From contig NC_069004.1 of the NCBI RefSeq assembly GCF_001194135.2, forward strand, positions 36,039,551-36,080,075: a stretch of DNA of 40,525 nt, given 5' to 3'. The notes under the pieces were generated by a model, which made no database searches, was not told where the DNA came from, and saw only the letters and a list, made by a program, of their open reading frames with translations. Source of the stretch: Octopus bimaculoides. Taxonomy: Eukaryota. A program made the translations under genes and the position numbers. Shown piece by piece: positions 3,196 to 40,525 of the stretch (its first letter is position 1; the number at the start of each line of letters is the position of its first letter).

Positions 3196-3240
<45 letters not shown>

Positions 3241-20228: not shown

Positions 20229-20284
20229 TTTGTTTAAAGTCCATGGACGCATTTCGTACAGTTCAATGTAGCTTGTGAATTTTC

Positions 20285-20908: not shown

Positions 20909-20942
<34 letters not shown>

Positions 20943-21543
20943 TAGTATTATAACCCGATTTCATTCGGGTCTACTCGGGCACATTTTAAAGATGAGGAAT
21001 TTTGCCCCAGAGGCCATGCCTTTCAATTGAGCAAACTCCCCACCACTTTTAACATAGATGTACAAATTTTCAGGTCAATCCGACCACATTTATTAACACT
21101 TTTGTCTGCAGTTATGCAGGCAACGTCCGCCCTTCTCACAAATATATAGTATATATATCGTAAATATACACGCTGTATTGATTACTCTTATTATTGTTAC
21201 TAATTATTAAATACAGGGTCATCTGTATAAGGTCTTCCTCAGTCGAACAAATTAATTTGTCACAATTAATTTATAAGCTTCTGTTAATCAAATATTTATT
21301 ACAATTGTTAATTTTTGAAAAGTTTTAGAGTTACATTAATTTATGGGAGGAGGGGGGGGGCATGCAAACACTCCCGATTCTTTGTCCCTTTCAATTGAAA
21401 ACTTGTGGCATATAATTTAAAATAGAACAAGCAGCAAAACTTATCTGCAATCAACACCCGATTTGTGTACGAAACGAAAATTATAGGGATGAAAACAAAC
21501 CAACATCAGTTGCTGAGCAGCAACAGACACGAACAGACACGAC

Positions 21544-21665
21544 GGGCTCCCGTACAGTTTACATCTACTAAAAACCATTCACAAGGCATTAGTCAGCGCA
21601 GAAGGCACTTGCCCGAAGTGCCGCATGTTGGGACTGAACTTGAAACCACGTGATTGCAAAGCGAA
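21544..21665 (-). mobile_element. SINE family A, head and body fragment
   Basis: ggactgaac (reverse complement of the B-box), ggcacttgcccgaagtgcc, catctactaaa. Confidence 0.65.
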
Positions 21666-21722
21666 CTATTTTAGCTGCCAGGCCAGGCCAGGCCAGCACT
21701 CACCATTCTGCAGCTCATTCAT

Positions 21723-21762
<40 letters not shown>

Positions 21763-23314
21763 GTCTCCAGAATAAACAGTTGACAAGAGGTGCGGACACA
21801 GAAAGCCAGTGAGAAACAGCTTCAGCCACACACACACACACACACACAGCTGACATCAAATCCTCCCCCCCCTCTCTCTCTCACCCACCCACACACACAC
21901 TCGCTGACACACAGACGGAAGTACATCAACTGATTTACAAATCTAAAAACAAATTTAATACAAAAACTTTCACTCCAGACCGTTTCCTACGTTTCAATTT
22001 ATTCACCAGAATCGGTGTGACATATTGACCTATATATATATATATACATACACACACACGACCTCCTGACCCATATATTGACCCAGTCAGTTTGCTTACA
22101 CATCGCACGTACTACAGATACTACTACTACAGTAAAACACGCTGAGGCGATGTGTATGGTCTCGTTTCTCAGCGTTAGATACACGCAAACATAAACATCT
22201 CAAACGATAATGTTTCTACACACAGAGTGACAAAAGGACCACACACACACACACACGCATACACACAATGTACATGATTGTGTGTGTGAGAGAGAGAGAC
22301 ATGTATGTTTATAAATCTAAACAGATACGAGCACGCACAGACATAAGTACAAATGTGATTATAAATATATCCGTGAGCATAACTGTGTTTGTGTGTGTAT
22401 ATATATAAATATACACACACACATACACACGAGCAAGCACCGACACAGACATACAAAGCAGATAAACAGGGAGATGGACAAAGCGAAAGAGAGAGGCGGA
22501 GGAAAGAGATCAATTACGAAAAGGGAGAGAGGCGGTAGGAGTTGGTGAAATAAAAGGGGAGGAGGGGTTTACAATTAAGAGAGAAGGAAGAGTTACAATA
22601 GAAAGGGAGGGGCGGGTCTCACAGAGCACGTGGCTGCTGTTATTGTCACCACTACCACCATTTCTTCCTCCTCTCAACACCACCACCATCATCTCACTGA
22701 TTATCCCGTTTCCTCCACCGCCGTCATGAGCGAAAATGAGAAACTCCACTTGGTAATTTCATCTGCTAGAAATAGCAACCAAATTTCCCTTTACTCGCAA
22801 TTCATCCTCTTGAAAAAAGAGGCCACATTGGGAAAATGTAATCCTTGATAGACAATAGTCGTGCCATTCCTATTGGGGTGGCGGCCGTGGCAATATTGTG
22901 TGGTAGTAATGATGGTGTTTGGGTGGGTGGTACCACACTCACCACCACCACACCTACTTTCCAACCTAGCAATTACTGCAACTGCAATAATTACAATCCA
23001 AGAATTTTAATTAAGAATATTATTTCAACTCTTGTGTGTAAGTACATGTGTGTGCGTGAGTGTATACGAAGCCACATTATGGATACAACATGACTGAACA
23101 ATTACGAAATTCAAAATCACGAAATCTCAATTTGTGGTAACTGGAAACGTCGAATGGGAAGACAGTTTTTTTTTTTGTTAAACACATCCTACATCTATGG
23201 TATATTCAACCGCTTACACGCTAATTCGATGAGTCTAGAAGTTCAGTTGATCAAACAATTGACTAGCCATCATTGCAAGAGGTGGAGGATCGATTTACCT
23301 TTCTATGCATATCT

Positions 23315-23450
23315 GCAGTCACAAGGCTTTCGCTGGCCTGGGGCTATAGCAGAACACACTTGCTCAAGGTGCTATGCAGTGGGACCAAACCTGAAACCAT
23401 GTGGTTGGACAGTGAGCTCCTGAACCACACACCCATGGCTGTATGTAGGC
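23315..23450 (-). mobile_element. SINE family A, head fragment
   Basis: ggggctatagcagaacacacttgctcaaggtgc...aaaccatgtggttgg...aaccacacacccatg. Confidence 0.7.
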
Positions 23451-24094
23451 ATGTGCAGTGCGCATGTGCATATGTATGTACTAGCTGAATTAGTAAATCT
23501 TTCTGGAAAAAAAAAAAGAAAAAAAAAAACACAATGAAATTTCGGACTAAGAACACTACTTTGTAGACCTTTTTTTTTTTTTCTTCTTTTAAGAATATAT
23601 TTTTGTTTGATATCCAAATTCCAAACATGCAATTTCAATTCTGTTAAAATTTGTGCACAAATTCAAATCTTTTGAAATCCTTTTCAATTTCTGCTTCAAC
23701 TAATCCTTACCCTAACCCCCAAAATTGCAATCCTAAGCGCTAACACAAAACATTAAATGCAATGTTTCGTCAAGATTGGTTCACTGGTATAGGCAGCAAG
23801 ATGGTAACAGACAGAAATCGTCATTTATGTGTGTGAAAATAAAGGCTGGTATATTATGTTCAATTCTATGTTACACTTGTCTCATTACAATATAAGTTAC
23901 AAGGGATAGACATGCAGAAAACGTACAGCACCTCCATGTTGTAATTCAGCCCAAGATTCAAATAGTATTAGTTTTGAAAATTTGCATCCATGTATGTGTA
24001 TATATGTATGTATGTGTTTGAGTTAGGACATACCGTTGCCTTGACATCAAATGATAGTTGTGAGAGAGTGCCATTGTCATACATGTGGTGGCCT

Positions 24095-24268
24095 TCATTC
24101 CCAATCTCGCATGAGAAACATGTCTGGCCATGGAGAAATATGACCTTGTTTGGAAAGAGGTGAAGGTTGGTGACAGGAGGAGCACCCAGCTGTAGAAAGT
24201 CTGCCTCAAGGAATTCATTCTGTCCCATGCAAACAAGGAAAAGTAGATGTTGATGATGATGAGTCCTA
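24095..24268 (+). mobile_element. Retroposon 3' end with (GAT)n tail
   Basis: ggttggtgacaggaggagcacccagctgtagaa...catgc...gatgatgatga. Related copies at about 34670-34795 (+), 33505-33655 (+) and 35768-35960 (-). Confidence 0.6.
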
Positions 24269-25218
24269 TGACAATCTTCAGGGCCTTCAAGTGTGGTGAT
24301 GGGGGGGGGGCGGTGAACCTGGCCTCAATGGACCCTACTAAAGGTATCCAGAGTGTCAGATGGCAGTGTTAAACTAGATGACAAGTGTGCCATCCAGGTA
24401 GTCCATGGTGGGATTTGAACTCAGAAGACAAAGGCCTGGAACACATACACGAAGGCATCACAACTGATGTTCACCCACCAAAAACTAGTTTCTTTATTGA
24501 TTCTTGAAGAATGAAAAAGCAAACTTGAGCAAGAGTTGAACTCAGAATGCAAAGAATGAAAATATTCTGCCACATGGGTCCACAGAAGCCAGTCTTTCTT
24601 TTTAAGGGTTGATGGTGTTTGAGCAAAGAGACACCATGGAAAGGGATGAGGATCTCTTCTTCTACTTTTAAGTATTTACCTTAAGAATGTCCAACCTCGT
24701 TTCTTAACACCCCTGCCCTGCCACCCTCCACTTGTCTTACCTTCCAGACTGGTAAAATGATAGATGGGGAGGGGTGGTAGTGGGTTGGTGGGGGCTGACA
24801 ACAGCTGGGATCATGAAAAATGGGGGGTGATGGTGGGGGTACGATGAGGGTTACTGAACCCAACCATCACATTACCCAGGTAAGGTGAGATGTGGTGGTG
24901 GTGGTGGTGGTGGCAGTAATGTGTGTGTGTGTGTGTGTTGCTGTCTGATTAAATGGAAGCAGAAGGAACACATCAACCACCGTCACCACCACCACTAATG
25001 AAAAAGTGACAACAATACTTAACTCCAACCACAGGTAAAAGAAAGGCGAGGAAGAAGAGGAAAGACGGTTGTGAATGGACAGCAGACAACAGCAGCCTCC
25101 ACCAGATGGAGCCACTCAGCAGAGTCAACTGCCTCCCTCTACATGTCAATGCCAGGTCCATAGACTCTAGCTTTAATTTACACAACAATGAATTGTTGAT
25201 ACAATGACAGCTGCCCTT

Positions 25219-25757
25219 CCTCATCTCTTGCCCCTAAAGGACCTCTAAAAGGTAAACAAGTGGATCCTCATCTCTTGCCCCTAAAGGACCTCTAAAAGGT
25301 AAACAAGTGGATCCTCATCTCTTGCCCCTAAAGGACCTCTAAAAGGTAAACAAGTGGATCCTCATCTCTNNNNNNNNNNNNNNNNNNNNNNNNNNNNNNN
25401 NNNNNNNNNNNNNNNNNNNNNNNNNNNNNNNNNNNNNNNNNNNNNNNNNNNNNNNNNNNNNNNNNNNNNNNNNNNNNNNNNNNNNNNNNNNNNNNNNNNN
25501 NNNNNNNNNNNNNNNNNNNNNNNNNNNNNNNNNNNNNNNNNNNNNNNNNNNNNNNNNNNNNNNNNNNNNNNNNNNNNNNNNNNNNNNNNNNNNNNNNNNC
25601 AAGTGGATCCTCATCTCTTGCCCCTAAAGGACCTCTAAAAGGTAAACAAGTGGATCCTCATCTCTTGCCCCTAAAGGACCTCTAAAAGGTAAACAAGTGG
25701 ATCCTCATCTCTTGCCCCTAAAGGACCTCTAAAAGGTAAACAAGTGGATCCTCATCT
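25219..25757. repeat. 47-bp minisatellite (CCTCATCTCTTGCCCCTAAAGGACCTCTAAAAGGTAAACAAGTGGAT)n interrupted by a gap
   Basis: Units start at 25219, 25266, 25313 and 25360, and again at 25609, 25656 and 25703. All visible full units are identical; gap at 25370-25599. Confidence 0.95.
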
Positions 25758-26018
25758 TTCAACCACTTTACCACCACCACCACCACCATCACCAACAGAT
25801 AATGAAGCTTCTACATGACCACTCAGTCAGACAGAAATAGCAACTAAATTCTTACTGCCTTCAATAATGCACTGCTCTTTAATAGTCAGGATGGTCATTA
25901 CTGGAATGCCTCTCTTTGATCTTTCGATCTGTTGGACTATAGCCGATATCTGAAGTAAGTAACTACTACAACAACAACAACATTTGTTCTATTTAAAAAT
26001 GAACAACTGTGTTTGTTG

Positions 26019-26055
<37 letters not shown>

Positions 26056-26295
26056 AGGTATGTGAGTGAATGTATATGTATGCATTTGTGTATGAATGCA
26101 TGTGTATATGTATGTATATGATTGTGTGTGTGTGTGTATATCATGAACTCTCCAATCAGAAGACAACATAGGAAGGTTCAGCAATTTCTTGCTGAACAAC
26201 CACGCAGATAATTTGTTTGTAGTGATCACTCCCTCCATCAAATCGACATTACCTGAACAGGTGCACCGTGTGCCACATGTCAAATGACAAAATGA

Positions 26296-26380
26296 TCGCA
26301 CACAACACAAAGCCCAGCCTGCGAATTGAAAGCATGATCTTGCACTCGTGAACACAGCACCCTAACCACTAAGCCATGCA
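26296..26380 (-). mobile_element. tRNA-derived SINE head
   Basis: Minus-strand TGGCTTAGTGG A-box and degenerate B-box, similar to the head at 430-521. Confidence 0.6.
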
Positions 26381-26407
26381 TGCATAATAATAATAATAAT
26401 AATAATA

Positions 26408-26440
<33 letters not shown>

Positions 26441-26451
<11 letters not shown>

Positions 26452-26704
26452 TCTAAGATGAAATTTATAAATATTTGATACATCGCTACGTGTGTTTCCA
26501 CAAATCACCTGATTTTAACATCAAAGTTGGTATCCTTGGGATTAGTACAGTATAGTCTGTATTATCAGCGGGCATCCGGTTGATCTTCGTCATTGATTCA
26601 TTTTTGATCAACTGGATGCCCATGGATAATACAGACTATACTGTGCTAATCCAAAGGATATGGACTCTAAATATTTATAAATTCCATCCTAGAATTATTA
26701 TTAT
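26441..26704. repeat. Bipartite fold-back inverted repeat
   Basis: Inner arms 26531-26585 and 26606-26660 (55 bp, 6 mismatches, 20-nt loop). Outer arms 26441-26476 and 26669-26704 (36 bp, 2 mismatches). Confidence 0.9.
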
Positions 26705-26978
26705 TATATTCAACCTACATTATATCAGTGTAACCATGATGCAGCCCTGAAAATCTGACTCCCTAGTCAGTATCATTAGACAGTAATTGGCATAATGAAA
26801 TAGGGGCTTTATTTGCATACCCCCTTATGTTACCATAAACGAATTTAAAAGATATTAGCATAGATCTGATGGTGATATCTCTATAAGGTATATACACACA
26901 CACACACACCTCCCTATAAACATACATTAGGTTTGGAAGGCTGACGTTAAACGATGATGATGATGATATCTTATTAAA

Positions 26979-27098
26979 ACTGAGGTGAGAGTTTGTATCA
27001 CAATTGAAGTTTCATGCCAGTGTGATCATCAGGTTAGTTTTGCTTGATGATTGCATTGGTGTGAAACTCAAGTCATGAGACAAACTCTCAGTTTCAGT
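26979..27098. repeat. Imperfect hairpin / palindromic MITE-like element
   Basis: Arms 26979-27033 and 27043-27098, 9-nt loop. Confidence 0.85.
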
Positions 27099-27959
27099 GT
27101 TAATAAAAAAAAACTATATCATCCACATTTATTGAGCACTCCTTTTCCATTTGTTTGACATTAACGTGTGTGTGTGTGCGTGCATATATATATATATATA
27201 TATAAACATGCACATACAGAGATTCTAAACCAAAGTGTATGTATAAAACTGAAGTGGTCATAATAACAACATTGTTTCAGGTTTCTGGTGAAAATTCCCA
27301 GTTACTAATGGAAGTCCCTCCTCGATCACTTCAAATGAGTAGAGACATGAATCTTGAGAAGGGACCACAGTCAGATTCAGTAAATCTTATTCCACTTCTA
27401 CCTTGATGAGAACTTATGTTTGCTTAAATTCACATGCAATTCATTCATTTCATGAGAGAGAGACAGACAGACAGACAGAGAAGAGAGAGAGTGTGTGCAC
27501 ATGTGCATGTCAGTGTAGACACACACACGGGCCTGTACACACACACACACAATACGTAGACTGAACTTCAGTGAAAGCATCTTGTGCAGGGAAGCAATAA
27601 CTTTAAATAAAAACCAACACAGTTTGGAAGGGCCACTTAAATCCATTCAGACAAACCTTCAGGTACTGGTAGCATGATGAAAGGCACCAAATCCATTCTG
27701 TGACACAATGCCACAAATAAAAAAATGATAGAAGAGACTGTAGAGCCTGACTGCGTCTACAGGAATAACCTTTACTACTTTAGTACGGCAAAGAGCAATG
27801 GGTCCTTGGGTACACCTGACCAAGTGAGAAAACCTCGTGAAGGTCATCAGTAATAGCACGCTTCCTGAAAACAGACTCCAGATATCAACCCATCCACCAT
27901 TAACAGAAGGTCAGGGCTGCAACCATCAATGTTAATAAAGCGAAAGATAAATCGGGTGA

Positions 27960-28995
27960 AATTGTTGGGATGCTAGACTAGAAGCATGAAGGTGATTTTA
28001 CTTGGCTAGATGCGTCTCCCCAAATACAGCAAATTGCAACAACAACTCCTGGTCTCTTGTCATTTCCTCAGTGAGGTCCAGTGTCTGAAGATCCTTTCTC
28101 ACCACTTCATCCCACATCTTCCGGGGTCAACCCTTTCCATAGGTTCCCTCTGCAATTAGAGCTTAGTATTTCTTCATGTGGCTGTCCTCATCCATTCACA
28201 TCACATGACCAAACCAGTGCCGTCTTCTCTCTTGCAAACCACATGATGCCTCTTATACCTAGCTTCCTTCTTAAGTCATCATTTACACTCTGTCGTGCAT
28301 GCACACTGACATTACTCATCTAGTGGAGCATGCTAGCTTCATTTCTTTCAAATCTTTGCAAGTCCTCTGTTGTCAAAGCCCATGCTTCACTGCCATGTAG
28401 CATGGCTGTTCCCACACAGGCATCATACAATCTGCCTTTCACTCTGAGGGAGAGGCTCTCAGTTACCAACAAAACGTAGAAGCTCTCTCAACTTTTCCCA
28501 GCCTCTTATTCTAGCAACTACACTTTCAGAACTTCCTCTTCCACTGTTAACTTCGTCTCCTGGGTAATAGAAGCTATCTATTACGTCTAATGACTCCCAA
28601 CAAGCATTTAAAGGAATCTACTGTCTGCCCATTTTTAGTGCTTATTATACCCACACATTCGACACACACAAAGACTATATTCTCCGTTAACCTTCCTGTG
28701 ATACCACTGCACCTCTTATGTGTCCAAAACTTGCACTGGGTACAACGTATGGAGTTTCTACCAATACCCTTCTTACATATCGAACAGGGCCATTTCCTTG
28801 TGATTTGTCTATTTTCCTACTTACTAGTATTTTGGTTTTTGCCAAATAAATCCTAAGGCCCTTAGATTCCACATCTGAAATTTTTCCTCCAGGTCAGATA
28901 CTGATTCAGCTAGAAGAACAAGGTCACCAGCATAGAGGAGCTCCAGTGGTGGCTGGTCTTGAATTCCTGTGTTATGGTCTGGAGGATTAAAATAA
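27960..28995 (-). mobile_element. RTE-like non-LTR retrotransposon 3' fragment (RT end, PHD finger, C-terminal region), frameshifted
   Basis: ELLYAGDLVLLAES (YADD changed to YAGD at 28934-28923), ESKGLRIYLAKTKILVS, a C4HC3 finger at 28786-28655, then RVKGRLYDACVGTAMLHGSEAW, typical of the RTE-type ORF2 C-terminus. Confidence 0.85.
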
Positions 28996-29099
28996 GTGGG
29001 GACTGAGAACCGTTCCTAGGTGAACTCCTACTTGTACACTGAATTCATTGTTATACCTGTTGCCAACCCTCATCTTCTTGACAGCAACCCTTTACATGG

Positions 29100-29217
29100 C
29101 TTGTGCAGCTCTCACTAACCCTCATCTATCCCTAGCTTGCACATTGACCACCAGATAAGGGGGTGTGGTCAATGTGGAAGCTAGGGATAGATGGGTGGTT
29201 AGAGAGAGCTGAACAAG
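29100..29217. repeat. Hairpin-forming inverted repeat
   Basis: Arms 29100-29151 and 29165-29217, 13-nt loop, 4 mismatches and 1 indel. Confidence 0.9.
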
Positions 29218-31044
29218 TGTAATATTAGTGAGTATGGGTGATGTGGTGTGGATAAGCTGAGAGATAAACTAAGTATAAGAGGAATCAAATGCGAGAGAGA
29301 GAGAGAGAGAGAGAACTGTAATGAAATGTGTATGGATGATAAGAGATGGTTAAAGCAGTGGAGAAGATCAAAGTGGAAGGAAATTATGGAAGATGAAAGT
29401 TGTGGTAGACGTAGGCAGAAGTGGTGAAAGCTGGAAATCACAAAAGACAAAGAAATATAACAATTGGTGAGATGCTGTGTTGGTGAGGATCAGTGCAATC
29501 CATGCCAGCAGGAAAAACAGACACAAAAATGAAGATGATGCCAAGTAAAATCTAGTGAAGAAATAACAGCTAAACTGTAGAAAGTCTGAGAATAGAAGCA
29601 CGGTTGATTGTGCCATTTTAACCATGCAGCCCACTTGTCCACTACAGACTAAGTCTTTACAAATGCTACAATCAGGGGACTCCAACCTAAATCCTTTTCT
29701 TTCCAAAACAGAAATTTATAGAGAAGTTATGAAATATATACAAATGTGTTTTGATAGGGTCATTTTACCAATAAAAAAACACATGCACTGCTTCCAATTG
29801 CTTGCTTAATATTATTATTATTACTAGTCAAATAGTAATTAACCAATTAGTTAAGTGATTAATCAATCCTTCTAACAACCACTTGATCATCGAGAGGGTT
29901 TGTCAGTCCTTTTCCTCACCTGCCAAACTAGCTGAATGATTGATTGATCAGATTAACTATAAGTTAATTAGCTAATGAGTTAACTAGTTGACTAATAATA
30001 AGGGTTTCGAATTTTGGCACAAAGCCAGCAACTTTTAGAGTGAGGAGCTAGTTGATTACTTCAACCAAAATACTTCACTGGTACTTTATTTAATTGACCC
30101 CAGAAGGATGAGAAGCAATGCTGATCTCAGCGATATTTGAACACAGGATGTAAAAAAGCTGGAAGAAATACTGTTACAAAAATTGTCCAACTCACTGCCT
30201 TGACTAATAATAATAATAATGACAAAATATAAAGTCTACAACTTTGTGTTTATAATGGCAAAACGACCGCCTCACAATACACTATATGGTTCAACACAAA
30301 ACATCTTACAAAATAAATACAAAACGTGTGTGTGTGTGTCTTTATACAAACCGGCCTCACTTTTGTTAATCCATATTAGTAAACCGTAACAGACAGAGGG
30401 AGAGAACTCCAATCTTACTAAAAGATAAAAATTCATCTGATTCAGTCAATAAAACGGTGTGTGTGTGTGTGTTACTCAATTCCCACTTATAACATATTGA
30501 GACCAGAAAGTATATAAAGTGTAAACTTATTGTATAGACCAAAGCATAAGAGTAGACACGTATTTCAATTATACTTATTACAAACATATAAAGGTATACA
30601 TACTCTCAGATGTAAGCATTGAGGTGGAGGTATACAAAAATCTCCAAACTTTTTTAAAAGTTTGTTTTAACCAGAGGCCAGTTGTTTAATAAGAGACGAT
30701 GGAGTAGAACTGCTGTTGCTATCAACACTTCAACCCCCCCCCCCCCATCACACAGAGTCAACACTTCCAGCAGTTCAACCCACCAGCCTAGAAAAAGGGA
30801 CTTCCATGCACTGTGCTCAAAATTATAAAAGACTACCTCCTCAGTTGCATAAAATAATTCAGTTTAATATAATGCTAGCAAGGAACACGGACGTTAAATG
30901 ATGATAATTAGTATTAAATACAGTTAGTACATCTTCTAATTGAAAGATGAAACTGAGAAAATGACAGTTGTTAGTTAATAAAATTAGTTTAAAGAATAGA
31001 GAACTTTCAAAAGTTTGAGGTTTTGGGGGAAATTCATTTAAATG

Positions 31045-32224
31045 TTGGGTTGGTGCATAATTATTGCAGCTTTTTTCAACAAAAACATCTTTAAATGATT
31101 ATTTCAAAGCATATTCACCATCTACTTCAATTTCTGCTTCCCATTTGCTTGACAGACAGTCGATTCCACAAGCGAAGAAGTTAATGTTCTTAGAGGCAAT
31201 CTGCTCTTTGACGGTGGCCACCAAGTCCTCCAAGTCAACTTTTCAGCGATCGATTGACATGATAGTCCGTGGATGCTTCTGTGGGAGAATATGGCAGATG
31301 AGGAAGCTGTTCCCAGCCCTTATTGGCAATAGATTCAACAACACAATGCTCAACATGTGTATGTGCATTATCATGGTTGAAGACAATATGGTTCCTTTTG
31401 CGCAGTCTTTTCGTTATGATTGCAGCATGAATGCAGTTGCTGTTGATATTTAATTGCTGCTTGCCGTTTTTGTCTGAAATCTACCACTGTTGGCACTCAT
31501 TGGCGTTATTCCACCAATAACAAATCCTGCTTCAGATGATTTCCCAGTGAATGATTCCACTTTTGTCCCACCAAACACACCTTACAGTGGACACCTGTCA
31601 GTATTCCTTTGGGTGAAATACAAACCTTCTTTCTTTTGATGTTTTTGAAGAGAAGCCACGATTCATCCCCAGTGATGAGATTCTTCAGGAAAGGGGTTTG
31701 CTCATTTTGCTGCAGTAAATCAGTAAAAATTTGGACACGCTTGGCTTTGTTGTTATCAGAGAGTTCGTGGGGGACCCACCCAGCCAATTTCCATACTTTT
31801 CCGAGCTTTTTGAGATGACGAACGATGGTCAAATGGTCCACATTGAAGTCTTAGGCCAACATTCGTGTTGTCAAGCTTTTGTCCATTTCCACAGCTGCCA
31901 AAAGTGCCTGCTCGTTGAAATTTGATGGTCAACCTCTTCCTTTTTTCATCTGCAAGGTTTGTATCGGCCGATTTGAACTTCCTGAACCATCTCTCAACTT
32001 GGCTTTTACTGATTGCTCCTTCACCAAAAAGTTCATTGAGATCGCGAAATGACTGTGTTGCATTCCAACCTTTCTCAAAGTGGTAGAGCATAATTTGACG
32101 AATGTAGATCTGATTTTTCGATATGCATTTTTATGAAAAAAAAGCTGACCGTCATTTAAAGATGCTTTTGTTAAATACTGTTATTTTTGTTGAAAAAAGC
32201 CGTAATAATTATGCACCAACCCAA
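31045..32224 (-). mobile_element. Near full-length mariner (DD34D) DNA transposon, frameshifted and inactive
   Basis: 41-bp TIRs at 31045-31085 and 32184-32224 differ at 2 positions. TA flanks the right end and TG the left. Transposase fragments include the HTH (MLYHFEKGWNATQSFRDLNELFG...VERWFRKFK), WVPHEL, TGDESW, HDNA (D at 31372-31370) and a third D at 31267-31265, with 34 residues between the last two aspartates. Confidence 0.95.
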
Positions 32225-32440
32225 TAGAAGGGGTTCTCTGTAATGAGTGACTGCACTATACATACACAACTGGGTCCAGCCATACACTGCTAAACCACAC
32301 ACAGCCAGATGAAATAACATTTCAGAGTTAGGACTGGCCACGCATTTTGCCAGGTCAAGTAAATAGGTTCCACACCATACAAAGAAAAGCTGTGGATGAA
32401 GGAGAGAAGTCGAAAACGAAAGATAATGAAGCTGCCCTAC

Positions 32441-32519
32441 CTGACCTCTCTTCAGTCCAAAATACCTGGCAACAGGGTCCCCTTGTTGGACACGGGGCAG
32501 TTGTGATTCCTTTAACTTA
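32441..32519 (-). CDS. POLR2E: RPB5 coding exon 7 ([26 protein letters not shown])
   Basis: Acceptor tgtctcaccag, donor GTAGGG, 79 nt. Conserved QLPR...[11 protein letters not shown] motif. Confidence 0.97.
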
Positions 32520-32955
32520 CTGGTGAGACAGGAATTAAGGAGAAAATAAAGGTTTCAAATTTGGAACAGGGCCAGCAGTTTCTTTTGGTGGGGGGTGTAG
32601 ATGGGGAAGGTGTGAGTGCAGGTGCATGTGTGGAGGGGAAGGGTGCATTTGAATGAAAGAAGAGAGAGAGAGAGTGTGTGTGTGTGTGTATTCATACATA
32701 TTTAAGGAAGTATATGTTTTTTACTGTCATCACAGAACAGGTTTAAATAGAAGGGAAAGGAGGGAGAGAGAGAGAAAAGTGAAGAGACGATAAGAAAAAG
32801 AGATAAACAAGGGAAGTAGAAAGGGGGAGAGGAGAGAGAGCAAAACAGCATGTGTGAGTGTATATACACACATACACACGTATATATATATGCGGGGAGA
32901 TGTGTTTAATGAGACAAAACAACAACAGCAGCAGCAGTCACAGTCTAAAGGATAC
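32520..32955 (-). other. U12-type (minor spliceosome) GT-AG intron, POLR2E intron 6
   Basis: The 5' splice site GTATCCTTT (32955-32947) matches the RTATCCTT consensus. A branch-site-like TCCTTAAT (32541-32534) lies about 15 nt before the AG. Confidence 0.9.
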
Positions 32956-33014
32956 TATCGCTGCAACAGTTCAGACTTCTCTTCGGGTGTCATCACAACA
33001 TGTTCTGGAACCAA
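32956..33014 (-). CDS. POLR2E: RPB5 coding exon 6 (LVPEHVVMTPEEKSELLQR-Y)
   Basis: Acceptor ttttattatttccag, 59 nt. Followed by the U12-type donor GTATCCTTT. Confidence 0.97.
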
Positions 33015-33123
33015 CTGGAAATAATAAAAAGAAGTAAAATCAATATTTCTTAATCAGAGTTCAAACTCCGCTGAGGTCGACTTTGCCTTTCATCCTTTCA
33101 GGATGGTTACATTAGAATTTTAA

Positions 33124-33464
33124 AGGTTTATGTCTGAACTAATTACGTCCGTTAATAAGATTTCAATATTCCTATAGTATTACCCTCATCATTAGAACCA
33201 TCAATAATCTGCAACATTTATAATTTCATCTTTGATCATCAGGTGATGGTTTATTCGGGGATGTGTAAATAACTCCAGGTTGAACTTGAACTCGGATCCC
33301 ATATTTCTACATAAAATATTCCTAATATTGTAATGCCTGAGATCTCTGTTGTTGACAAATCAAACCACCTCCAACATATTTGTAGAGGGATTTGCCGATA
33401 AATAAAATTTCAGCTCTAATAACCACATGAAATAATCTTAATAACATTCATCTCAGATAAACCT
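33124..33464. mobile_element. TTAA-flanked non-autonomous DNA element (Kolobok-like termini)
   Basis: TTAA at 33120-33123 and 33465-33468. Termini AGGTTTAT...ATAAACCT are exact inverses, with weaker subterminal complementarity. Confidence 0.55.
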
Positions 33465-33468
33465 TTAA

Positions 33469-33829
33469 CCCTTCAGCATTAATAAAACTGACTTCGTCTG
33501 TGATGGTGCCATGTAAAAAGCACTCAGCCCACTCTATGGAGTGGTTGGCACTAAAAAGAGCATTCAGCTAAAGAAGGTGTAGGCCTCTGCCTGGCCAACT
33601 CCTGTCAAACTGTCCAATCATGCCACCATGGAAGGAAGATGATGATGATGATGATAACTGTCAAATGTAGTACATATTTATTTCCAGTGTTTTCAATTAT
33701 GTTTTATCTTGATTTCAATGATATTATTACATATTTTAGAATGACATTGTATGGTAGGTGAGAGGTCAGATGTGGCTGGATTGAATAGAAAACAAGTAGA
33801 ATATTTTGGCCACCTAAAATGTTAAAGAG
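33469..33829 (-). mobile_element. TTAA-flanked piggyBac-like MITE carrying a SINE-like insertion (about 33505-33655)
   Basis: TTAA-CCCTTCAGCATT left end and AATGTTAAAGAG-TTAA right end. The interior is recognisably homologous, in inverted orientation, to 38038-38260. Confidence 0.6.
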
Positions 33830-34283
33830 TTAATCAATTGAATGAATTTTCAATCAATCAATTGGAAAATGAGCAGAGAAAAAAATTAAATTCAAGGACA
33901 TGACAACCTCTCCAGTGTAGTACCTGGTCCACCTTGTATAATGTACCCAAATATACCTTATAAAGTAATTAGTGTTGAGAAGGGCATCCACCGGTAGTGG
34001 AAACATATGAACAAGACAGGATCCTTTGGCCCCTTGAAAAGGTTAGTAATTTTGAAAAAGAACTGATTTAGACTGTGATGATCCCATCCAACTGCAAGGA
34101 GAGCAGTCATAAAATGATGAATCAACAAAATTGTCAATAAATAAATAGAATTTTCAACATTTGAACAGCAAAATTCTGATCAAGCATTAGGATTTTCAAT
34201 GACTAATCAATAGAGTTATCCTGAATGAATATTCTGAGTTAGTTTGAAATCAAACTCTCTAAACATGGTCACAACAGACTTAC

Positions 34284-34364
34284 CATGTGTGATGTGATGT
34301 TTACCAATAATTCTGCTTCCAAAAACTGTTCCAGAATATATTTTGGTGCCATGTCTACCAGAGC
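34284..34364 (-). CDS. POLR2E: RPB5 coding exon 5 ([27 protein letters not shown])
   Basis: Inside ORF 34269..34451. Acceptor ttcctgaccag, donor GTAAGT, 81 nt. Confidence 0.97.
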
Positions 34365-34959
34365 CTGGTCAGGAATATAACAAAATAATGAATTAATAAC
34401 ATATATATACATATATATATATTGAAACAACATACCATACACCATCAACATAAAATATGTTTCAAAAACATGAAACTTGCAAGATCTGACCTGGAGGTGC
34501 TAAAACACACCAGCTGCTGTTATTGTATAACCCTAGGTCAGTTCAGCTTGAGGAGACTACTGATCAAAAATTAATGGAGTGGTGAGTGAAACTTAACAGA
34601 TGGAAACTGAATGGAAGCCTGCTACGTGTCATCTTCATCTTTTAATGTCTGTCTTCATTTCCAGTCTTCCATTGAAAAAACATGTCTGACCAAGTGAGGG
34701 TTGGCAACAGGAAGCGCATCCAGCTGTAGAACATCTGCCTCAACATATTGTCTGGCCTATGCAATCATGGAAAAATGGATGCTAAATGATAATGAGGACA
34801 CACTCTATAAACACAATTAGGCCCCTCACCTAATTTCCTCACTCCAACTCTTCGTTCTCTATTTGCCAATCTCCCCATCGTTTGCTTCATGTGGCAGTGA
34901 TGCTCATTTACAGCATCATGTCAGGACAAAGATAGAGACACATGCATACAAATATGATG

Positions 34960-35116
34960 GGCTTCTTTCAGTTTCCATCTACCAAATCTACTCACTCAAG
35001 TCTTTGGTTGGCTTGGGGCTATAGTACAGTACACTTGCCAAAAGTGCTTCACAGAGGGCCTGAACCAGAGGCCAAATGGTTGGGAAGCAAGCTTCTAAAC
35101 CACACAGCTTTGCCTG
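34960..35116 (-). mobile_element. SINE family A, head and body
   Basis: cttctttcagtttccatctaccaaatc...ggggctatag...aagcttctaaaccacacagc. Confidence 0.7.
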
Positions 35117-35398
35117 TGTCTATATGTACGTGTGAGATCCAGTCGACAACACCATGACATGTCTATGTATGAAATAAAGTATAAAATAAAGGTTGGTGTT
35201 GAGAAGAGCATTCAACAAAGCAAACTGTTGCAAGAAATCTCATCTAACCCTTGGCCCTGATACAAAGTGGGAGGCGGGGGAAAAAAAAAGATCAATGCCC
35301 GGTACAAGTTTTGGTTTTGTGCAGTTTCCATAAAATATAAGAAACAAATGTAGATATATTTTAGTCTTATCGTTTGAGATAAGCATCAAACTGCATTA

Positions 35399-35623
<225 letters not shown>

Positions 35624-35736
35624 TTAAAAAAAAAAAAAAACAGAAACAAAAAACTTACTAACATTTAGGAAACAGTAGTGAATCTAAGTGAATCACCAGG
35701 GATACAAATATATGGAAATAATAATGGAAAGAAAGT

Positions 35737-35772
<36 letters not shown>

Positions 35773-36133
35773 ATATCATCATCATCATTTAATGTCCATT
35801 TTCCATGCTGGCATGGGTTGGATTGACAGAAGCTGGCAAGCCAGAGGATTGTACCAAGCTTTGCTGCCTGTTCTGGCAGAGTTTCCATGGCTCAGTATGC
35901 CCACTTCCTAACACCAACCACTGTACAGTGTATGGGTTGCCTCTTGTGTGGCACCAGTGAGGTCACCAAGTCACTTACAAGACTAGTATTTAAGGAAGTG
36001 GCTTGTGCCAGGTGATGTGAGGTTAAACTATGATAGAGGTACAGATACAAGTGTCTTGCTTTAGAGGAGATACATGGCTAACCCAGACAGAGCAAGACAA
36101 AGAGATGGTAGCAAAATGCCAACATACACACAC

Positions 36134-36188
<55 letters not shown>

Positions 36189-36903
36189 GTGGTGAAATCC
36201 TGACAACCCAACAGGATATCAAGTGAGCTGTCCTAAACCTTATAAAGGTGCATGCATACTGACAATGCAATGTACAGTGTGGTGTGTGCAGTCGCATCTG
36301 TGAAGGCTGTTGTAGAAGTCGTTGAGAAGAGATATAAGTTTGTTACTGATTTAGTGTTTGTAGTGTTATAACACTGTTACAGTGTAGTCCAACAATTAAG
36401 ACGCGTTTTTTTTAATATTAAGTAAAGACAGTATCCGTCCATCAACGTCATTCAACACAAAATAAGATATCTCTATTTTTACCTATTATTTACTATTGTA
36501 GAAAGAAATTAATGATAGAATATTATAAGCTAAATGTGAGGTTTGGTCCACGGACCTCTGTCAAAAAACTATGGATTTTGGGATAAGAAATTGTGTACCT
36601 ATATATGTATGTGAATGCATATATATATATATATACACACACACAAAGAATGATAAAAGAAAAACTTCTTGATAGAACCAGATTATCAATGTATGGGTGT
36701 ATATATGCATACGTATACACACCCATATATGACCTGATGCAGTAGTAAGGGAAGAAAGGTGACATAGAAGAGGAATGACAAAAAATAAGGGTTTTAACAT
36801 TGGTGCCAATATAATTAGTATAATATTCCACAAAATGTGATGGATACTTTGTGTCTATGTTATAGAGAGAGAGAGAGGCAAGGTAAGTAAAATTCTGTCT
36901 CAC

Positions 36904-36965
36904 CTGTAGGGTCATCGTTGTGAGCCACTAAAACAATCAAATCACTGCGGGCTGGTCGACGTTCA
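36904..36965 (-). CDS. POLR2E: RPB5 coding exon 3 ([21 protein letters not shown])
   Basis: Acceptor ttttctctttatag, donor GTGAGA, 62 nt. Phases 2 and 1 fit the neighbouring exons; conserved [10 protein letters not shown] motif. Confidence 0.96.
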
Positions 36966-37330
36966 CTATAAAGAGAAAACATTGAGCATTTGTCATTCAC
37001 AACAGTAAACAACATCATCATTAACAGTGTTTTAATTGAGATGATTTAATTCTATGCAACACTCTTATGAGATAACCAAATTACTGCAGAATGTCCATGT
37101 TACATGAAAGTCAAAGAAAATATAACATTTGGCATTATGGAATTCCAGGTTAATGCAAAATTGCCAAATACTTGATGCTTCTGTAAGGCTAGGATTGTCT
37201 GAAGTAATAATAATGAGTTGTAAGGAGTGTTAATAAATGATGGGAGGGGGTTCTACCTTGGTACAGAAGGGGAGAGGAGAAGGAGATGTTATACAGATGT
37301 AGAGAGGAGGTAAGCAGAGAGGTTACGTTA

Positions 37331-37450
<120 letters not shown>

Positions 37451-37502
37451 TTATTATAATGAAGATATGCTACATAAATACATACACACATATATATAAT
37501 AG

Positions 37503-37640
37503 GTGCAGAAGTGGCTGTGTGGTTAAGAAACTTGTTTGCTTGCCAATCATGTGGTCTCGAATTCATCCCCACTGTATAGCCCCAGGTTGACCAAAGCTTT
37601 GTGAATGAATTTGGCAGACAGAAACTGAAAAAAGTCAGTC
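37503..37640 (+). mobile_element. SINE family A, CpG-decayed copy
   Basis: gtggctgtgtggttaagaa...gaccaaagctttgtgaatgaatttggcagacagaaactgaaa. Confidence 0.7.
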
Positions 37641-38033
37641 ATGTATGTATATGTTTGTGTTTATCTCCTCCATTCTTTCAACCTTTTTTATGATTTAGGA
37701 TTAAGTTCTGTGCCCCACCTCTTCTTTCTACATCAATGACTTTCTTACCATCACGTCCAGTGCCAACCCTCTTACAATACCCTTCAGTTCTCTTATGTTA
37801 TCCACTCAACAACCTAGACACTACATAAAGACACAACTTGAAAGCATCCTCCAATACGCACATGTCAATCTTGTCATTGAACACAGAAAACATCAACAAA
37901 AATGCATCCCCTTAAAATGAGCAGCACTCAGCAAAATCTCCTCAAAATTGCTCCAATTATTGAGTCTCACTGTTCTAGACACATTGGAATGCAGTTCCAG
38001 CCATGTTAAAGATGTGCTGGCAAAACCACATCT

Positions 38034-38263
38034 TTAAGCCTTCAGCATTTTAAACTGGCCATATCTGGCCCGAATATTCTACCCGTTTTATGTCCCAAAC
38101 TGACCAGATCTGACCTCTCACACCTCTCCTACAATATCATTAAAAAAAAATACAATCATACCATTGAAATCTCAAAACTACAAGATAATGCATGATCAAC
38201 TGAGGACAAGGTGAATAAATAAGTATTATGTTTGGCAGAGTAATCTGAATGCTGCACGGTAAA
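38034..38263 (+). mobile_element. piggyBac-like MITE, same family as 33469-33829
   Basis: TTAA-GCCTTCAGCATT start and degenerate AATGCTGCACGG end. Shares the blocks aatattctac, atctgacctctca and cattgaaatc with the other copy. Confidence 0.55.
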
Positions 38264-38339
38264 CATTACCTGAAGTACAACCCAATGCCAAGCCTTTGTT
38301 TTTCAAGCCAGAAGATATTTTAGCCTTCACCAATCATTG

Positions 38340-38645
38340 ACACTTTCCAAAGCTTGGCTGAGGCTCACATGGAGTATTATTCTCACATTTGGGATGGTGT
38401 TATAGCTGCACTCACAGGTAGCATCCAGAAAAGGGCCACCCAACTGTTTAGCATCACCAAAAGACATGCTTCAGTCTCTGGCCTAAGGTTGCAGTCTTCT
38501 CTCTCTGTTTTTCTACTGCAACTATTTTGGCCTCTACTCTGGCTGCCTCATACCATTCCATCCCACTTGCCACTCTTTTTCTCATCACTCCAAGTCCCAC
38601 TACACATGTTAAAATGAGCAGTGCAGTCCTGACGCAGGCAGACAT
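38340..38645 (+). mobile_element. LINE ORF2 3' fragment (Jockey/L2/Crack-like)
   Basis: ORF 38354..38617 HMEYYSHIWDG...SIQKRATQL resembles the post-RT 'RP.MEYCSHIW.G...IQKRA' motif. Clade assignment is tentative. Confidence 0.65.
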
Positions 38646-38884
38646 AGTAGATGTGTTGTTTGACTAACTCACTCACATCTAACCCAACTCACACAACACA
38701 AGAGTGCTTCATCTGTGAACTACATAGTTGTTTAACCAATTATTTACCTAATCTACATTTACTTAATATCACTTTTACAGTGTCTATCTATCCAGTCAAC
38801 ATCTACACACAGTGTAATGCCTATATCTACCTAATAATGTCTACATGTTACAACTTCGTGCAGTAATGTAGTCTCAGCAAACAA

Positions 38885-39330
38885 AGTCGAAATTTCTGTT
38901 ACCCTCACAATATGTTCAGCTATTTCTTCCTATTTCTCCATTTCCTTCTATTTGACAGTCTTTTTTCTGTCCATTCATCTCTTAATATCCACAGTCACTA
39001 TTTACTCCTGCATCTCGGGGAGAAAATATGAGAAAAAGAAGCCTTCCTCCCCCATAACAAAAACAAAACAGTTATTATCAATAACTCTTTAGGTAACAAA
39101 ATATTTTCAAAATATTTGTTACCTAAAGAGTTATTGATAATAACTGTTTTGTTTTTGTTATGGGGGAGGAAGGCTTCTTTTTCTCATATTTTCTCCCCGA
39201 GATGCAGGAGTAAATAGTGACTGTGGATATTAAGAGATGAATGGACAGAAAAAAGACTGTCAAATAGAAGGAAATGGAGAAATAGGAAGAAATAGCTGAA
39301 CATATTGTGAGGGTAACAGAAATTTCGACT
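38885..39330. repeat. 446-bp palindrome (inverted duplication) in POLR2E intron 1
   Basis: 38885-39107 is the reverse complement of 39109-39330, apart from one extra A near the centre. Single central C at 39108. Confidence 0.97.
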
Positions 39331-39756
39331 GACGATTTTACAAAGAACTTCCACGCGGTTACATACACACCAACAATACAAGTTGCTACATACACACACA
39401 TATTTATATATACATACATACGACAGTAGAAATACTGCTAAGGAACTTGAATAAATAGTCATATCCAAACTTATTTCGCCTGACTGGGAAATTCGATCCA
39501 CGAAGAATATTTCAGAAGCTTCCAACAAAAACTGAATCGACAGTTTTTTTTGTTTTGTTCCTTGAGGTTCCCTTGTCTTTCCTTCTAAAGGAAGGTTTAC
39601 TTTAAAACATTATTGGAACGTTTCATTTTATATAATTGTCAGAAGACTGACGACGACCGGACAGTCTGGAGAAATACAACGTGGTTTGTGACTAAATAAA
39701 TATTATTATTTATTTAGTTGGTAAAGAAACAAAAAGAAATGTAACTGAGCATTTAC

Positions 39757-39813
39757 CTGCATTACAGTCCTACGAATACGCCATAATTTATAAGTTTCTT
39801 GCTCGTCATCCAT
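39757..39813 (-). CDS. POLR2E: RNA polymerases I/II/III subunit RPABC1 (RPB5), coding exon 1 (MDDEQETYKLWRIRRTVMQ)
   Basis: Manual translation matches the recognised RPB5 N-terminus. ATG at 39813-39811; phase-0 donor GTAAAT follows. Confidence 0.97.
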
Positions 39814-39859
39814 CTCCAAGAATTCACTGGAATATTTCTTATATTTTCTGCGATTTTAA

Positions 39860-39960
39860 ACGAACCAAACCTGACTCCAAAACCGGAACCGTAATGAGTC
39901 GCAAATAAATACTTCCGGTTATTGAAGCTGCCGTAGCTTCGTAAAATCGAAGGAAGATTT
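39860..39960 (-). promoter_or_regulatory. POLR2E proximal promoter / 5' UTR region with ETS motif
   Basis: ACCGGAAGT on the minus strand at 39919-39911, about 100 nt upstream of the ATG. CpGs reappear from about 39.3 kb onward. The TSS cannot be located from sequence. Confidence 0.5.
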
Positions 39961-40525
39961 CTAAGTAAAAACAAAACTAAATACGTATAGATATCAGTCT
40001 ATTTATCCCAAAACCATACGTTCATGGAGAGGTAGATATCGACTAAAGAACTTCACTACAATAGATGGTAAAAGTAAACCTTGTTGGGAAATGAATTCAG
40101 ATTCTCAATAAATATTGTTTCTAATTGACATGTTTTAACGGGGATGTGGTTAGTCGATTACATCGATTCCAGTATTTGAGTGGTAATTTACTAACCACAG
40201 AAATATAAGAGGCAAATTAACATCAGCGGGATTTGAACTTGAAGAGCAAGAAAAAAAGTACCTTTCCAACCTGACCGCTTAGACGCTGTTGGTTCAGAGT
40301 ATATAGGGATTTTTTGGCAAGAAGAGTTTCAGAAAATTCACACGACCCGAATTTTTACCGTCATAGCTTTCAGGAAAATGGGTGTCATTTGAAAGTTTGC
40401 ACAAATACCTTTTAAAAGGCATAGATTACGATTTTAAAGAAATTTGTTACGAAAACTTTTTCCGAGGGTGTGAGGAGGGAAGTTTCGGATCAGGAAGACC
40501 ACATAAGTTGGAATTTCTCCGTTTT

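What the first reader, a model, noticed from the sequence alone, without database searches (positions are those of the whole stretch)
38885..39330. Essentially perfect 446-bp spacer-less palindrome in POLR2E intron 1
Seen: a 223-nt left arm and 222-nt right arm are exact reverse complements, except for one extra A beside a single central C. The arm is ordinary-looking unique sequence with no TIR/TSD, in a window where the other hairpins and TE copies are visibly diverged. Established: long perfect palindromes extrude cruciforms and are unstable. About 220 bp of perfect dsRNA is an excellent substrate for ADAR and Dicer, and coleoid cephalopods edit RNA extensively. Inference: this is either a very recent fold-back inversion-duplication that places a long dsRNA in the pre-mRNA of an essential gene, or a library/assembly artefact. 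Both should be treated as plausible.
Basis: partly seen in the sequence, partly recalled or inferred. Interest (0 to 1): 0.72.

Follow-up and report, generated by a model that had tools for sequence, protein, structure and literature searches.

The report
Near-perfect 446-bp palindrome in octopus POLR2E intron
Intron 1 of the Octopus bimaculoides RNA-polymerase subunit gene POLR2E carries a 222-base stretch copied backwards right next to itself, which a sister species lacks; it is most likely a young one-step replication error, but I could not check sequencing reads, so an assembly error is not excluded.

Summary
Window 38885-39330 is a 446-bp palindrome: a 223-nt left arm, a central C at 39108, and a 222-nt right arm. 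The right arm is the exact reverse complement of the left arm minus one A of the run 39098-39101.

The window is Octopus bimaculoides. POLR2E/RPABC1 lies on the minus strand, and the palindrome sits in intron 1 (39756-37421).

The new result is comparative. The Octopus sinensis ortholog has only one arm, collinear with the window's left arm and both flanks. The upstream flank there abuts what is the palindrome centre in O. bimaculoides. So the right arm is a derived inverted copy inserted directly beside its template. It is not a transposon: no target-site duplication (TSD) and no other copies.

Both arms share all 28 substitutions and all indels that separate them from O. sinensis. That bounds the age at under about 3 My, which is young but not necessarily "very recent".

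The anatomy fits a replication template-switch mutation. It includes two blunt novel junctions, an asymmetric centre, and a switch point on a self-complementary 10-mer.

Read-level validation was not possible, and both public O. bimaculoides assemblies appear to share the same short-read contigs. I put real at about 0.6 and artefact at about 0.3. The dsRNA, ADAR and Dicer consequences remain inference.

The parts
38885..39107 (.). Left arm (distal arm in gene orientation), 223 nt. This is the ancestral copy and the template of the duplication.
   Evidence: It is collinear with O. sinensis L002 5867-6111 and continuous with the downstream flank. It is the only other match to the arm in 145 kb.
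39098..39107 (.). Self-complementary 10-mer AAAATATTTT at the inner end of the left arm. It marks the inferred switch point. Its A-run 39098-39101 holds the one unpaired extra A.
   Evidence: It is partly conserved in O. sinensis, where GAAAATATT abuts the upstream flank.
39108..39108 (.). Central unpaired base, C on the + strand and G in gene orientation. It is present in the single-copy O. sinensis sequence (TTTGAAAATATT).
39109..39330 (.). Right arm (proximal arm in gene orientation), 222 nt. This is the derived inverted copy, absent from O. sinensis.
   Evidence: It matches O. sinensis only in reverse orientation, onto the same L002 5867-6111 segment. It is identical to the left arm at every site that differs from O. 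sinensis.
39331..39393 (-). Upstream flank U. In O. sinensis the ortholog (L002 5805-5865) directly abuts the centre-side end of the single arm. The outer junction ...TTTCGACT|GACGATTTT is blunt, with at most 1 nt of shared sequence.
38218..38884 (-). Downstream flank D, collinear with O. sinensis L002 6112-6801 at about 84% identity.
37421..39756 (-). POLR2E (RPABC1) intron 1, which contains the palindrome. The palindrome lies 426 nt from the exon-1 donor and 1,464 nt from the exon-2 acceptor.
39757..39813 (-). POLR2E exon 1 coding part (MDDEQETYKLWRIRRTVMQ).
39418..39462 (-). Alternative first coding exon of RefSeq isoform X2 (MTIYSSSLAVFLLSY). Its donor lies 87 nt upstream of the palindrome, so the X2 first intron also contains the palindrome.

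Best explanation
The palindrome is a real, lineage-specific inverted duplication in the sequenced O. bimaculoides genome, made in one step by a replication template switch (a 'template-switch mutation').

The inferred steps, on the + strand, are these. Synthesis ran through the segment 38885-39107 and the C at 39108. At the self-complementary motif AAAATATTTT the growing end moved to the opposite strand and copied the same 223 nt backwards, losing one base in a T-run. It then returned to the original template at the very next base, now 39331.

The result is template, one central base, and the reverse-complement copy, with nothing lost.

The element has no function of its own. As consequences, the DNA can extrude a cruciform and should be deletion-prone. 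Every POLR2E pre-mRNA should carry a roughly 222-bp perfect hairpin in intron 1, a likely ADAR (and possibly Dicer) substrate that is removed with the intron.

Shown: the structure, the ancestral single-copy state in O. sinensis, the junction sequences, and the predicted RNA fold. Inferred: the switching mechanism, that the palindrome exists in the animal's DNA, and all RNA consequences.
For: 1. O. sinensis, in a locus without any N, has flank U, one arm, then flank D. U abuts the centre-side end of the arm. O. bimaculoides therefore has an extra inverted copy inserted exactly beside its template.

2. The two arms are identical to each other at all 28 substitutions and 26 gap columns that separate them from O. 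sinensis. The copy therefore postdates nearly all lineage-specific change.

3. It is not mobile. There are no other copies in 145 kb and no target-site duplication. By contrast, a genuine dispersed repeat nearby has copies only 67-83% alike.

4. The switch point lies on a 10-bp self-complementary motif.

5. Template switching is documented to create perfect reverse-complement repeats in a single event. The longest such pattern in human haplotype-resolved assemblies is 318 bp, so 222 nt is within range.

6. Assembler logic favours a real structure. Meraculous closes a gap only along a unique, read-supported k-mer path whose length agrees with the pair-estimated gap size. If the true sequence were simply U, one arm, D, there would be no fork and no gap to close.

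7. The centre is asymmetric, with a 1-nt bulge and an odd central base, so it is not a graph 'turn-around' on a palindromic k-mer (for that mechanism).

8. The outer junction is blunt, with no overlap an assembler could have used to join contigs.
Against: - There is no independent evidence that the two novel junctions exist in DNA, because reads could not be examined.
- GCA_001194135.2 is 100% identical to the window over the 2,601 bases compared, and appears to carry the same contigs, so it is not a second witness.
- Perfect short-spacer inverted repeats with arms this long are very rare in well-finished animal genomes. The longest in human has 140-bp arms.
- Long perfect palindromes are unstable in vivo (general knowledge).
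- The region comes from a gappy short-read scaffold. It has demonstrable local flaws: two gaps flanked by perfect direct duplications. The palindrome lies 1.2 kb from a contig end.
- Polarity rests on one outgroup only. The Argonauta intron does not align.
- That the assembly was built with Meraculous is from my own knowledge. The original paper could not be opened.
Confidence: 0.6

Rival explanations
1. Assembly or library artefact. The animal's genome has one arm, or some other unassemblable sequence at the U/arm boundary. The inverted copy was introduced by gap closure, mis-oriented reads or duplicated chimeric fragments in the 2015 short-read assembly, then inherited by the chromosome-scale version.
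For: - The window is a short-read scaffold with 8 N gaps.
- Two gaps are flanked by 53-nt and 150-nt perfect direct duplications, which is typical of unmerged contig ends.
- The N-free contig ends 1,195 bp from the palindrome.
- The only other O. bimaculoides assembly is base-identical over the 2,601 bases compared.
- Perfect arms longer than 200 nt are almost unknown in finished animal genomes.
- Exact arm identity is what an assembler produces when both arms are built from the same k-mers.
Against: - A de Bruijn-type assembler cannot invent the two novel junctions. Both need read support, and a fold-back chimera gives only the central junction, not a precise return to the next base of the original template.
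- The centre is asymmetric, not the symmetric turn-around expected of a graph artefact.
- No overlap exists at the outer junction that could explain a false contig join.
- None of the 8 gaps in the window has inverted flanks, and no other long palindrome occurs in the 45 kb of this assembly that I could see.
- Meraculous closure requires agreement with the pair-estimated gap size.
Confidence: 0.3
2. An old palindrome that predates the O. bimaculoides / O. sinensis split. Arm-to-arm gene conversion has kept it perfect, and O. sinensis lost exactly one arm.
For: - Large palindromes elsewhere are homogenised by gene conversion (title and abstract listed, PMC6790999).
- There is no second outgroup to fix polarity, because the Argonauta intron 1 is not alignable.
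Against: - It requires a scar-free deletion of precisely one 222-nt arm in O. sinensis, leaving U joined to the centre base.
- It also requires about 34 My of survival of a spacer-less palindrome, a structure expected to be unstable. The split date is as cited.
- A single derived event is more parsimonious.
Confidence: 0.05
3. A foldback or MITE-type transposon, or another mobile palindromic element, inserted into the intron.
For: Palindromic MITEs about 200 bp long exist and are heavily edited in other animals, for example frog Harbinger.
Against: - One arm is ancestral, in-place intron sequence shared with O. sinensis.
- There is no target-site duplication.
- There are no further copies in the window or in the three octopod loci.
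- Real repeats here are 67-83% alike, not 100%.
Confidence: 0.02

Closest known systems
Template-switch mutations (Ripley quasi-palindrome model; Loytynoja and Goldman four-point model) that create perfect hairpins and new miRNA stems
   Same: A reverse-complement copy of adjacent sequence is inserted in one event beside its source. The result is a perfect stem that is absent from the outgroup. The switch occurs at a short self-complementary motif, and the event lies in an intron.
   Different: The scale differs. This copy is 222 nt with essentially no loop. The miRNA-founding events cited are 28-83 nt, and a 318-bp maximum was seen in human haplotype assemblies. Read support is not shown here.
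Human palindromic AT-rich repeats (PATRR11, PATRR22, PATRR17); from my own knowledge
   Same: They are spacer-less, near-perfect palindromes of several hundred bp. PATRR11 is about 450 bp. They are AT-rich, non-coding, cruciform-forming, and hard to clone and sequence.
   Different: PATRRs are much more AT-rich, polymorphic and old enough to have variant alleles. They are known for mediating recurrent translocations. Here the sequence is 66% A+T and unique, with a known single-copy ancestor. No instability data exist for it.
Fold-back inversions / inverted duplications from fold-back priming or ODIRA (origin-dependent inverted-repeat amplification) in yeast, cancer and human germline
   Same: A head-to-head inverted duplication is seeded at a short inverted repeat, and a strand switch at a fork or break is invoked (PMC10622511, PMC3907307).
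   Different: Those events span kb to Mb, usually keep a spacer between the short inverted repeats, and end in dicentrics or triplications. This one is a 222-nt local insertion with an immediate return to the original template.
Long hairpin RNA (hpRNA) endo-siRNA loci and hyper-edited intronic inverted repeats
   Same: An intronic inverted repeat is predicted to fold into long perfect dsRNA. O. bimaculoides is among the most hyper-editing animals surveyed.
   Different: No small-RNA or editing evidence was available. The arms derive from the host intron itself, so any siRNAs would have no obvious trans target. Rfam gives only sub-threshold generic hairpin matches.

Membership tests
Template-switch mutation (TSM) | The derived allele contains a reverse-complement copy of nearby sequence. 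| tested here: met
   The right arm equals the reverse complement of the left arm minus 1 nt.
Template-switch mutation (TSM) | The ancestral or outgroup sequence lacks the copy but has the source and both flanks, collinear. | tested here: met
   O. sinensis L002 5805-6801 reads U, single arm, D. There is only one informative outgroup, because Argonauta is not alignable.
Template-switch mutation (TSM) | One event explains all differences: source and copy are close together, and synthesis returns to the original template. | tested here: met
   The copy is directly adjacent to its source. Synthesis resumes at the next base. The only extra difference is a 1-nt run-length change.
Template-switch mutation (TSM) | The variant exists in genomic DNA, shown by independent reads or segregation. 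| not testable with these tools
The second assembly is identical over the stretch compared and appears to share the contigs.
Foldback / MITE transposon | Target-site duplication and multiple dispersed copies. | tested here: not met
   The flanks are ...ACAA|A... and ...T|GACG..., with no duplication. There are no other copies in 145 kb. One arm is orthologous in place.
Known RNA family (miRNA or other, Rfam 15) | A match at or above the family's gathering score. | tested here: not met
   The best hit is 68 bits against a gathering score of 171. Hits are plant long-hairpin miRNA models, several of them matching both strands, which indicates structure-only matches.
hpRNA / ADAR-hyper-edited dsRNA locus | The transcribed strand folds into long near-perfect dsRNA. 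| tested here: met
   The 546-nt pre-mRNA segment folds at -407.8 kcal/mol, z = -47.6, as a continuous stem of about 222 bp. This is a prediction only.
hpRNA / ADAR-hyper-edited dsRNA locus | A-to-G clusters or 21-23-nt small RNAs mapping to the arms. | not testable with these tools
   No RNA reads were accessible.
Fold-back assembly artefact | It sits at a contig end or gap, or is exactly symmetric about a palindromic k-mer. | tested here: inconclusive
   It is not at a gap. The nearest N run starts 1,195 bp away, and none of the 8 gaps has inverted flanks. The centre is asymmetric. However, closed gaps are invisible in the released sequence.
Fold-back assembly artefact | The centre is supported only by chimeric reads, and depth is that of a single-copy arm. 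| not testable with these tools

The most novel reading that the evidence does not exclude
The palindrome is real and young, and possibly still polymorphic. It would then be a 222-nt template switch that in one step planted a perfect long hairpin in the first intron of an essential Pol I/II/III subunit gene, in an animal with extreme ADAR activity. That would make it a natural case of long-hairpin RNA birth, three to eight times longer than the template switches shown to found miRNA stems. Its hyper-editing, dicing, effect on POLR2E splicing and DNA fragility could all be measured between carriers and non-carriers.
Probability: 0.15. Interest if true: 0.6.

Novelty: new member of a known kind. 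Interest (0 to 1): 0.33.

Why it matters
If real, this is an unusually large and clean example of a single replication error creating a long perfect hairpin. The ancestral state is preserved in a sister species, and the host gene is essential and ubiquitously transcribed. It would give a defined endogenous substrate for asking three questions:
- how octopus cells handle long perfect intronic dsRNA (editing versus dicing versus innate sensing);
- how long a spacer-less palindrome survives in an animal germ line;
- how far template switching can go in making new hairpin genes.

If it is an artefact, it is a concrete error to correct in the reference used for nearly all O. bimaculoides editing studies. 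Such false palindromes would inflate estimates of dsRNA-forming potential.

Tried and rejected

2. Sampling more of the O. bimaculoides assembly, to see whether such palindromes are systematic. I searched with a read-through of the decayed mariner transposase in intron 7, hoping for annotated O. bimaculoides copies to look up. All 61 hits were from other organisms or unnamed metagenome contigs. This was a dead end and cost one protein search.

3. A second outgroup. In the Argonauta hians POLR2E locus only exons 1 and 2 align, and intron 1 is too diverged.

4. Original genome paper. It is not held, by PMC id or by DOI. The assembler and library details are therefore from my own knowledge plus the Meraculous paper.

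5. Looking up intron ORFs that span the junctions in independent Logan contigs. I considered this and dropped it. A k=31 graph breaks at the arm boundaries whether or not the palindrome is real, so failure would say nothing.

6. Rfam gave only sub-threshold generic hairpin hits.

7. Microhomology at the outer junction. A 7-nt TTTCGAC similarity exists between the end of the right arm and the inferred ancestral centre. The observed junction (CGACT|GACGA) is not the product such annealing would give, so I do not claim microhomology there.

8. Porath et al. report that 0.44% of random 50-mers in the O. bimaculoides assembly have a >95% identical inverted match within 2 kb. I considered this as a sign of systematic palindromes. 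I set it aside because their BLAST ran without a low-complexity filter, and (AT)n-type microsatellites, which are abundant here, would score.

Full report
**1. The observation**

The sequence at 38885-39330 was read directly. The repeat finder gives arms 38885-39100 and 39115-39330: 216 nt, 100% complementary, 14 nt apart.

A script resolves the centre:
- The left arm is 223 nt (38885-39107).
- A single C sits at 39108.
- The right arm is 222 nt (39109-39330).
- The right arm is exactly the reverse complement of the left arm once one A of the run 39098-39101 is removed.

It is the only structure of its kind here. The other 216-nt "inverted repeats" in the window are runs of N. A scan of the window plus three fetched octopod loci (about 145 kb) found no other perfect short-spacer inverted repeat with arms longer than 38 nt, and the 37-nt one in the window is microsatellite.

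**2. Where it is**

A tblastn with RPB5 places eight POLR2E exons on the minus strand. The spliced 210-aa product is 100% identical to O. bimaculoides RPABC1 isoform X1 and 99% identical to the O. sinensis protein.

Coordinates:
- Exon 1 coding sequence: 39813-39757.
- Exon 2: 37420-37332.
- Intron 1: 39756-37421.
- The palindrome lies 426 nt from the exon-1 donor and 1,464 nt from the exon-2 acceptor.

RefSeq isoform X2 starts in an alternative exon at 39462-39418, whose donor is 87 nt upstream of the palindrome. Both isoforms therefore carry the palindrome in their first intron.

The window is a short-read scaffold with eight N gaps. In the chromosome-scale record CM046624.1 a 1,715-N gap begins immediately after the window's last base. 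The palindrome therefore lies in an N-free stretch, 25600-40525, and sits 1,195 bp from its end.

**3. What it is: comparison with O. sinensis**

I fetched the POLR2E locus from O. bimaculoides GCA_001194135.2 (L001) and O. sinensis GCA_006345805.1 (L002).

L001 is 100% identical to the window over the 2,601 bases compared, palindrome included. To my knowledge this assembly is a Hi-C re-scaffolding of the 2015 Illumina contigs. It is therefore not an independent witness.

L002 contains no N and has only one arm. In detail:
- L002 5867-6111 aligns collinearly with the window's left arm and runs on into the downstream flank, to L002 6801.
- The window's right arm matches the same L002 segment, only in reverse orientation.
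- The upstream flank (window 39393-39336) aligns to L002 5805-5865. It therefore abuts the end of the single arm that corresponds to the palindrome centre.

In gene orientation:
- O. sinensis reads CTTTGTGAAAGTTT-G-AAAATATTACCTAAAG...
- O. bimaculoides reads CTTTGTAAAATCGTC-[AGTCGAAATTTC...AACAAATATTTT]-G-AAAATATTTTGTTACCTAAAG...

The bracketed 222 nt are the reverse complement of what follows. The right arm is thus an extra, inverted copy inserted exactly beside its template.

A four-way alignment shows the two O. bimaculoides arms are identical to each other at all 28 substitutions and 26 gap columns that separate them from O. sinensis.

The arm has no other copy in any fetched sequence, and the palindrome has no target-site duplication. 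By contrast, a genuine dispersed repeat that O. sinensis carries 60 bp away (L002 5431-5805) has many copies at 67-83% identity. A transposon origin is rejected.

**4. Age and polarity**

Arm divergence from O. sinensis is 13.4% (Jukes-Cantor distance 0.148). With the 34-My split quoted in the O. vulgaris genome paper, this gives about 2.2e-9 substitutions per site per year.

No substitution between two 222-nt arms then bounds the age at roughly under 3 My (95%), with a mean waiting time to the first difference of about 1 My. "Young" is justified. "Very recent" is not required.

A short-read assembler would also tend to collapse small arm differences far from the centre.

Polarity rests on one outgroup. 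In Argonauta hians only exons 1 and 2 align. An ancient palindrome kept perfect by gene conversion, with a scar-free loss of one arm in O. sinensis, is possible but unparsimonious.

**5. Mechanism**

The anatomy is that of a template-switch mutation. On the + strand, in four-point terms:
- Synthesis proceeds to point 1 (C, 39108).
- It jumps to point 2 (39107) on the other strand.
- It copies back to point 3 (38885).
- It resumes at point 4, the next original base (now 39331).

Nothing is lost. The switch point sits on AAAATATTTT (39098-39107). This self-complementary 10-mer could let a nascent 3' end pair with the opposite strand. The single missing base lies in the matching homopolymer run, as slippage would give. 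The outer junction (...TTTCGACT|GACGATTTT) is blunt.

Template switching is documented to create perfect reverse-complement repeats in one event. The examples cited that founded miRNA stems were 28-83 nt. Patterns up to 318 bp occur in human haplotype-resolved assemblies. A 222-nt event is therefore large but within range.

**6. Real or artefact?**

The argument is therefore indirect.

For an artefact:
- The source is a gappy short-read assembly.
- Two gaps in the window are flanked by perfect direct duplications of 53 and 150 nt.
- A contig end lies 1.2 kb away.
- Perfect arms this long are nearly unknown in finished animal genomes. The human maximum is 140 bp.

For a real structure:
- A k-mer assembler cannot create the two novel junctions without reads that contain them.
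- A fold-back library chimera yields only the central junction, never a precise return to the adjacent base of the original template.
- The centre is asymmetric, unlike a graph turn-around on a palindromic k-mer.
- No overlap exists at the outer junction for a false contig join.
- Meraculous closes a gap only along a unique read-supported path whose length agrees with the pair-estimated gap. A real palindrome would be assembled by exactly that route: the arm as a fork-bounded repeat contig, the flanks linked by pairs, and the gap closed by oriented reads.
- A plain single-arm genome would have produced no fork and no gap.
- None of the eight visible gaps has inverted flanks.

I put real at about 0.6, artefact at about 0.3, and the remainder on the gene-conversion and other scenarios.

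**7. Consequences (inferred)**

The 546-nt pre-mRNA segment is predicted to fold into one continuous stem of about 222 bp: -407.8 kcal/mol, against -118 +/- 6 for shuffles, z = -47.6.

O. bimaculoides shows one of the strongest hyper-editing signals among 21 species surveyed, and editing tracks long near-perfect dsRNA. ADAR hyper-editing of this intron is therefore a reasonable expectation, but it is untested.

Rfam gives only sub-threshold, structure-only matches to long-hairpin miRNA models, several of them on both strands. There is no evidence that the hairpin is a gene.

**8. Verdict**

- It is a derived inverted duplication placed directly beside its template.
- It is best explained by a template switch.
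- It is not a transposon.
- It is young, but only bounded to a few million years.
- Its existence in the animal remains to be shown with reads.

It is a new member of a known kind, of modest interest unless it is validated and shown to be edited, diced or polymorphic.

Noticed in passing
window 16515-16640 and 25370-25599: Two N gaps are flanked by perfect direct duplications of the contig ends. At the first, the last 53 nt before the gap equal the first 53 nt after it. At the second, 150 nt match at 100% within a short tandem unit. These look like unmerged overlapping contig ends or collapsed tandem repeats in the scaffold.
   Followed up: partly
window 5667-6112: This N gap is exactly 446 bases, the same length as the palindrome. 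It is probably coincidence, and I found no link.
   Followed up: no
window 40525 / L001 2574-4288: The window ends exactly where a 1,715-N gap begins in CM046624.1. The N-free contig carrying the palindrome is therefore 25600-40525.
   Followed up: yes
window 39418-39462 (-): RefSeq isoform X2 of RPABC1 (P0036) starts with MTIYSSSLAVFLLSY. This is encoded by an alternative exon inside intron 1 whose donor is 87 nt upstream of the palindrome.
   Followed up: partly
window 30900-32100 (-) and 6479-7160 (-): Two decayed mariner-type transposase remnants with frameshifts and stops. The first lies in POLR2E intron 7. Its closest database relatives are unnamed metagenome or Logan proteins and rotifer, nematode and spider SETMAR-like proteins, not annotated octopus proteins.
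   Followed up: partly
window 3151-3224: A 74-bp perfect zero-spacer palindrome made of microsatellite, (TCTA)n - TATATA - (TAGA)n.
   Followed up: no
L002 5431-5805 (O. sinensis): A 375-bp dispersed repeat is present in O. sinensis intron 1, 60 bp from the junction, and absent at that site in O. bimaculoides. It has many 67-83% identical copies in the window and in L002. ARAGORN finds no tRNA in it.
   Followed up: partly
window 17250-32438: The last POLR2E intron is about 15 kb and holds three of the N gaps. The O. sinensis gene spans 34.5 kb, against 22.6 kb in O. bimaculoides.
   Followed up: no
L003 19976-20056 (Argonauta hians): A perfect inverted repeat with 38-nt arms and a 5-nt spacer in complex, non-repetitive sequence. 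It may be a small template-switch hairpin.
   Followed up: no
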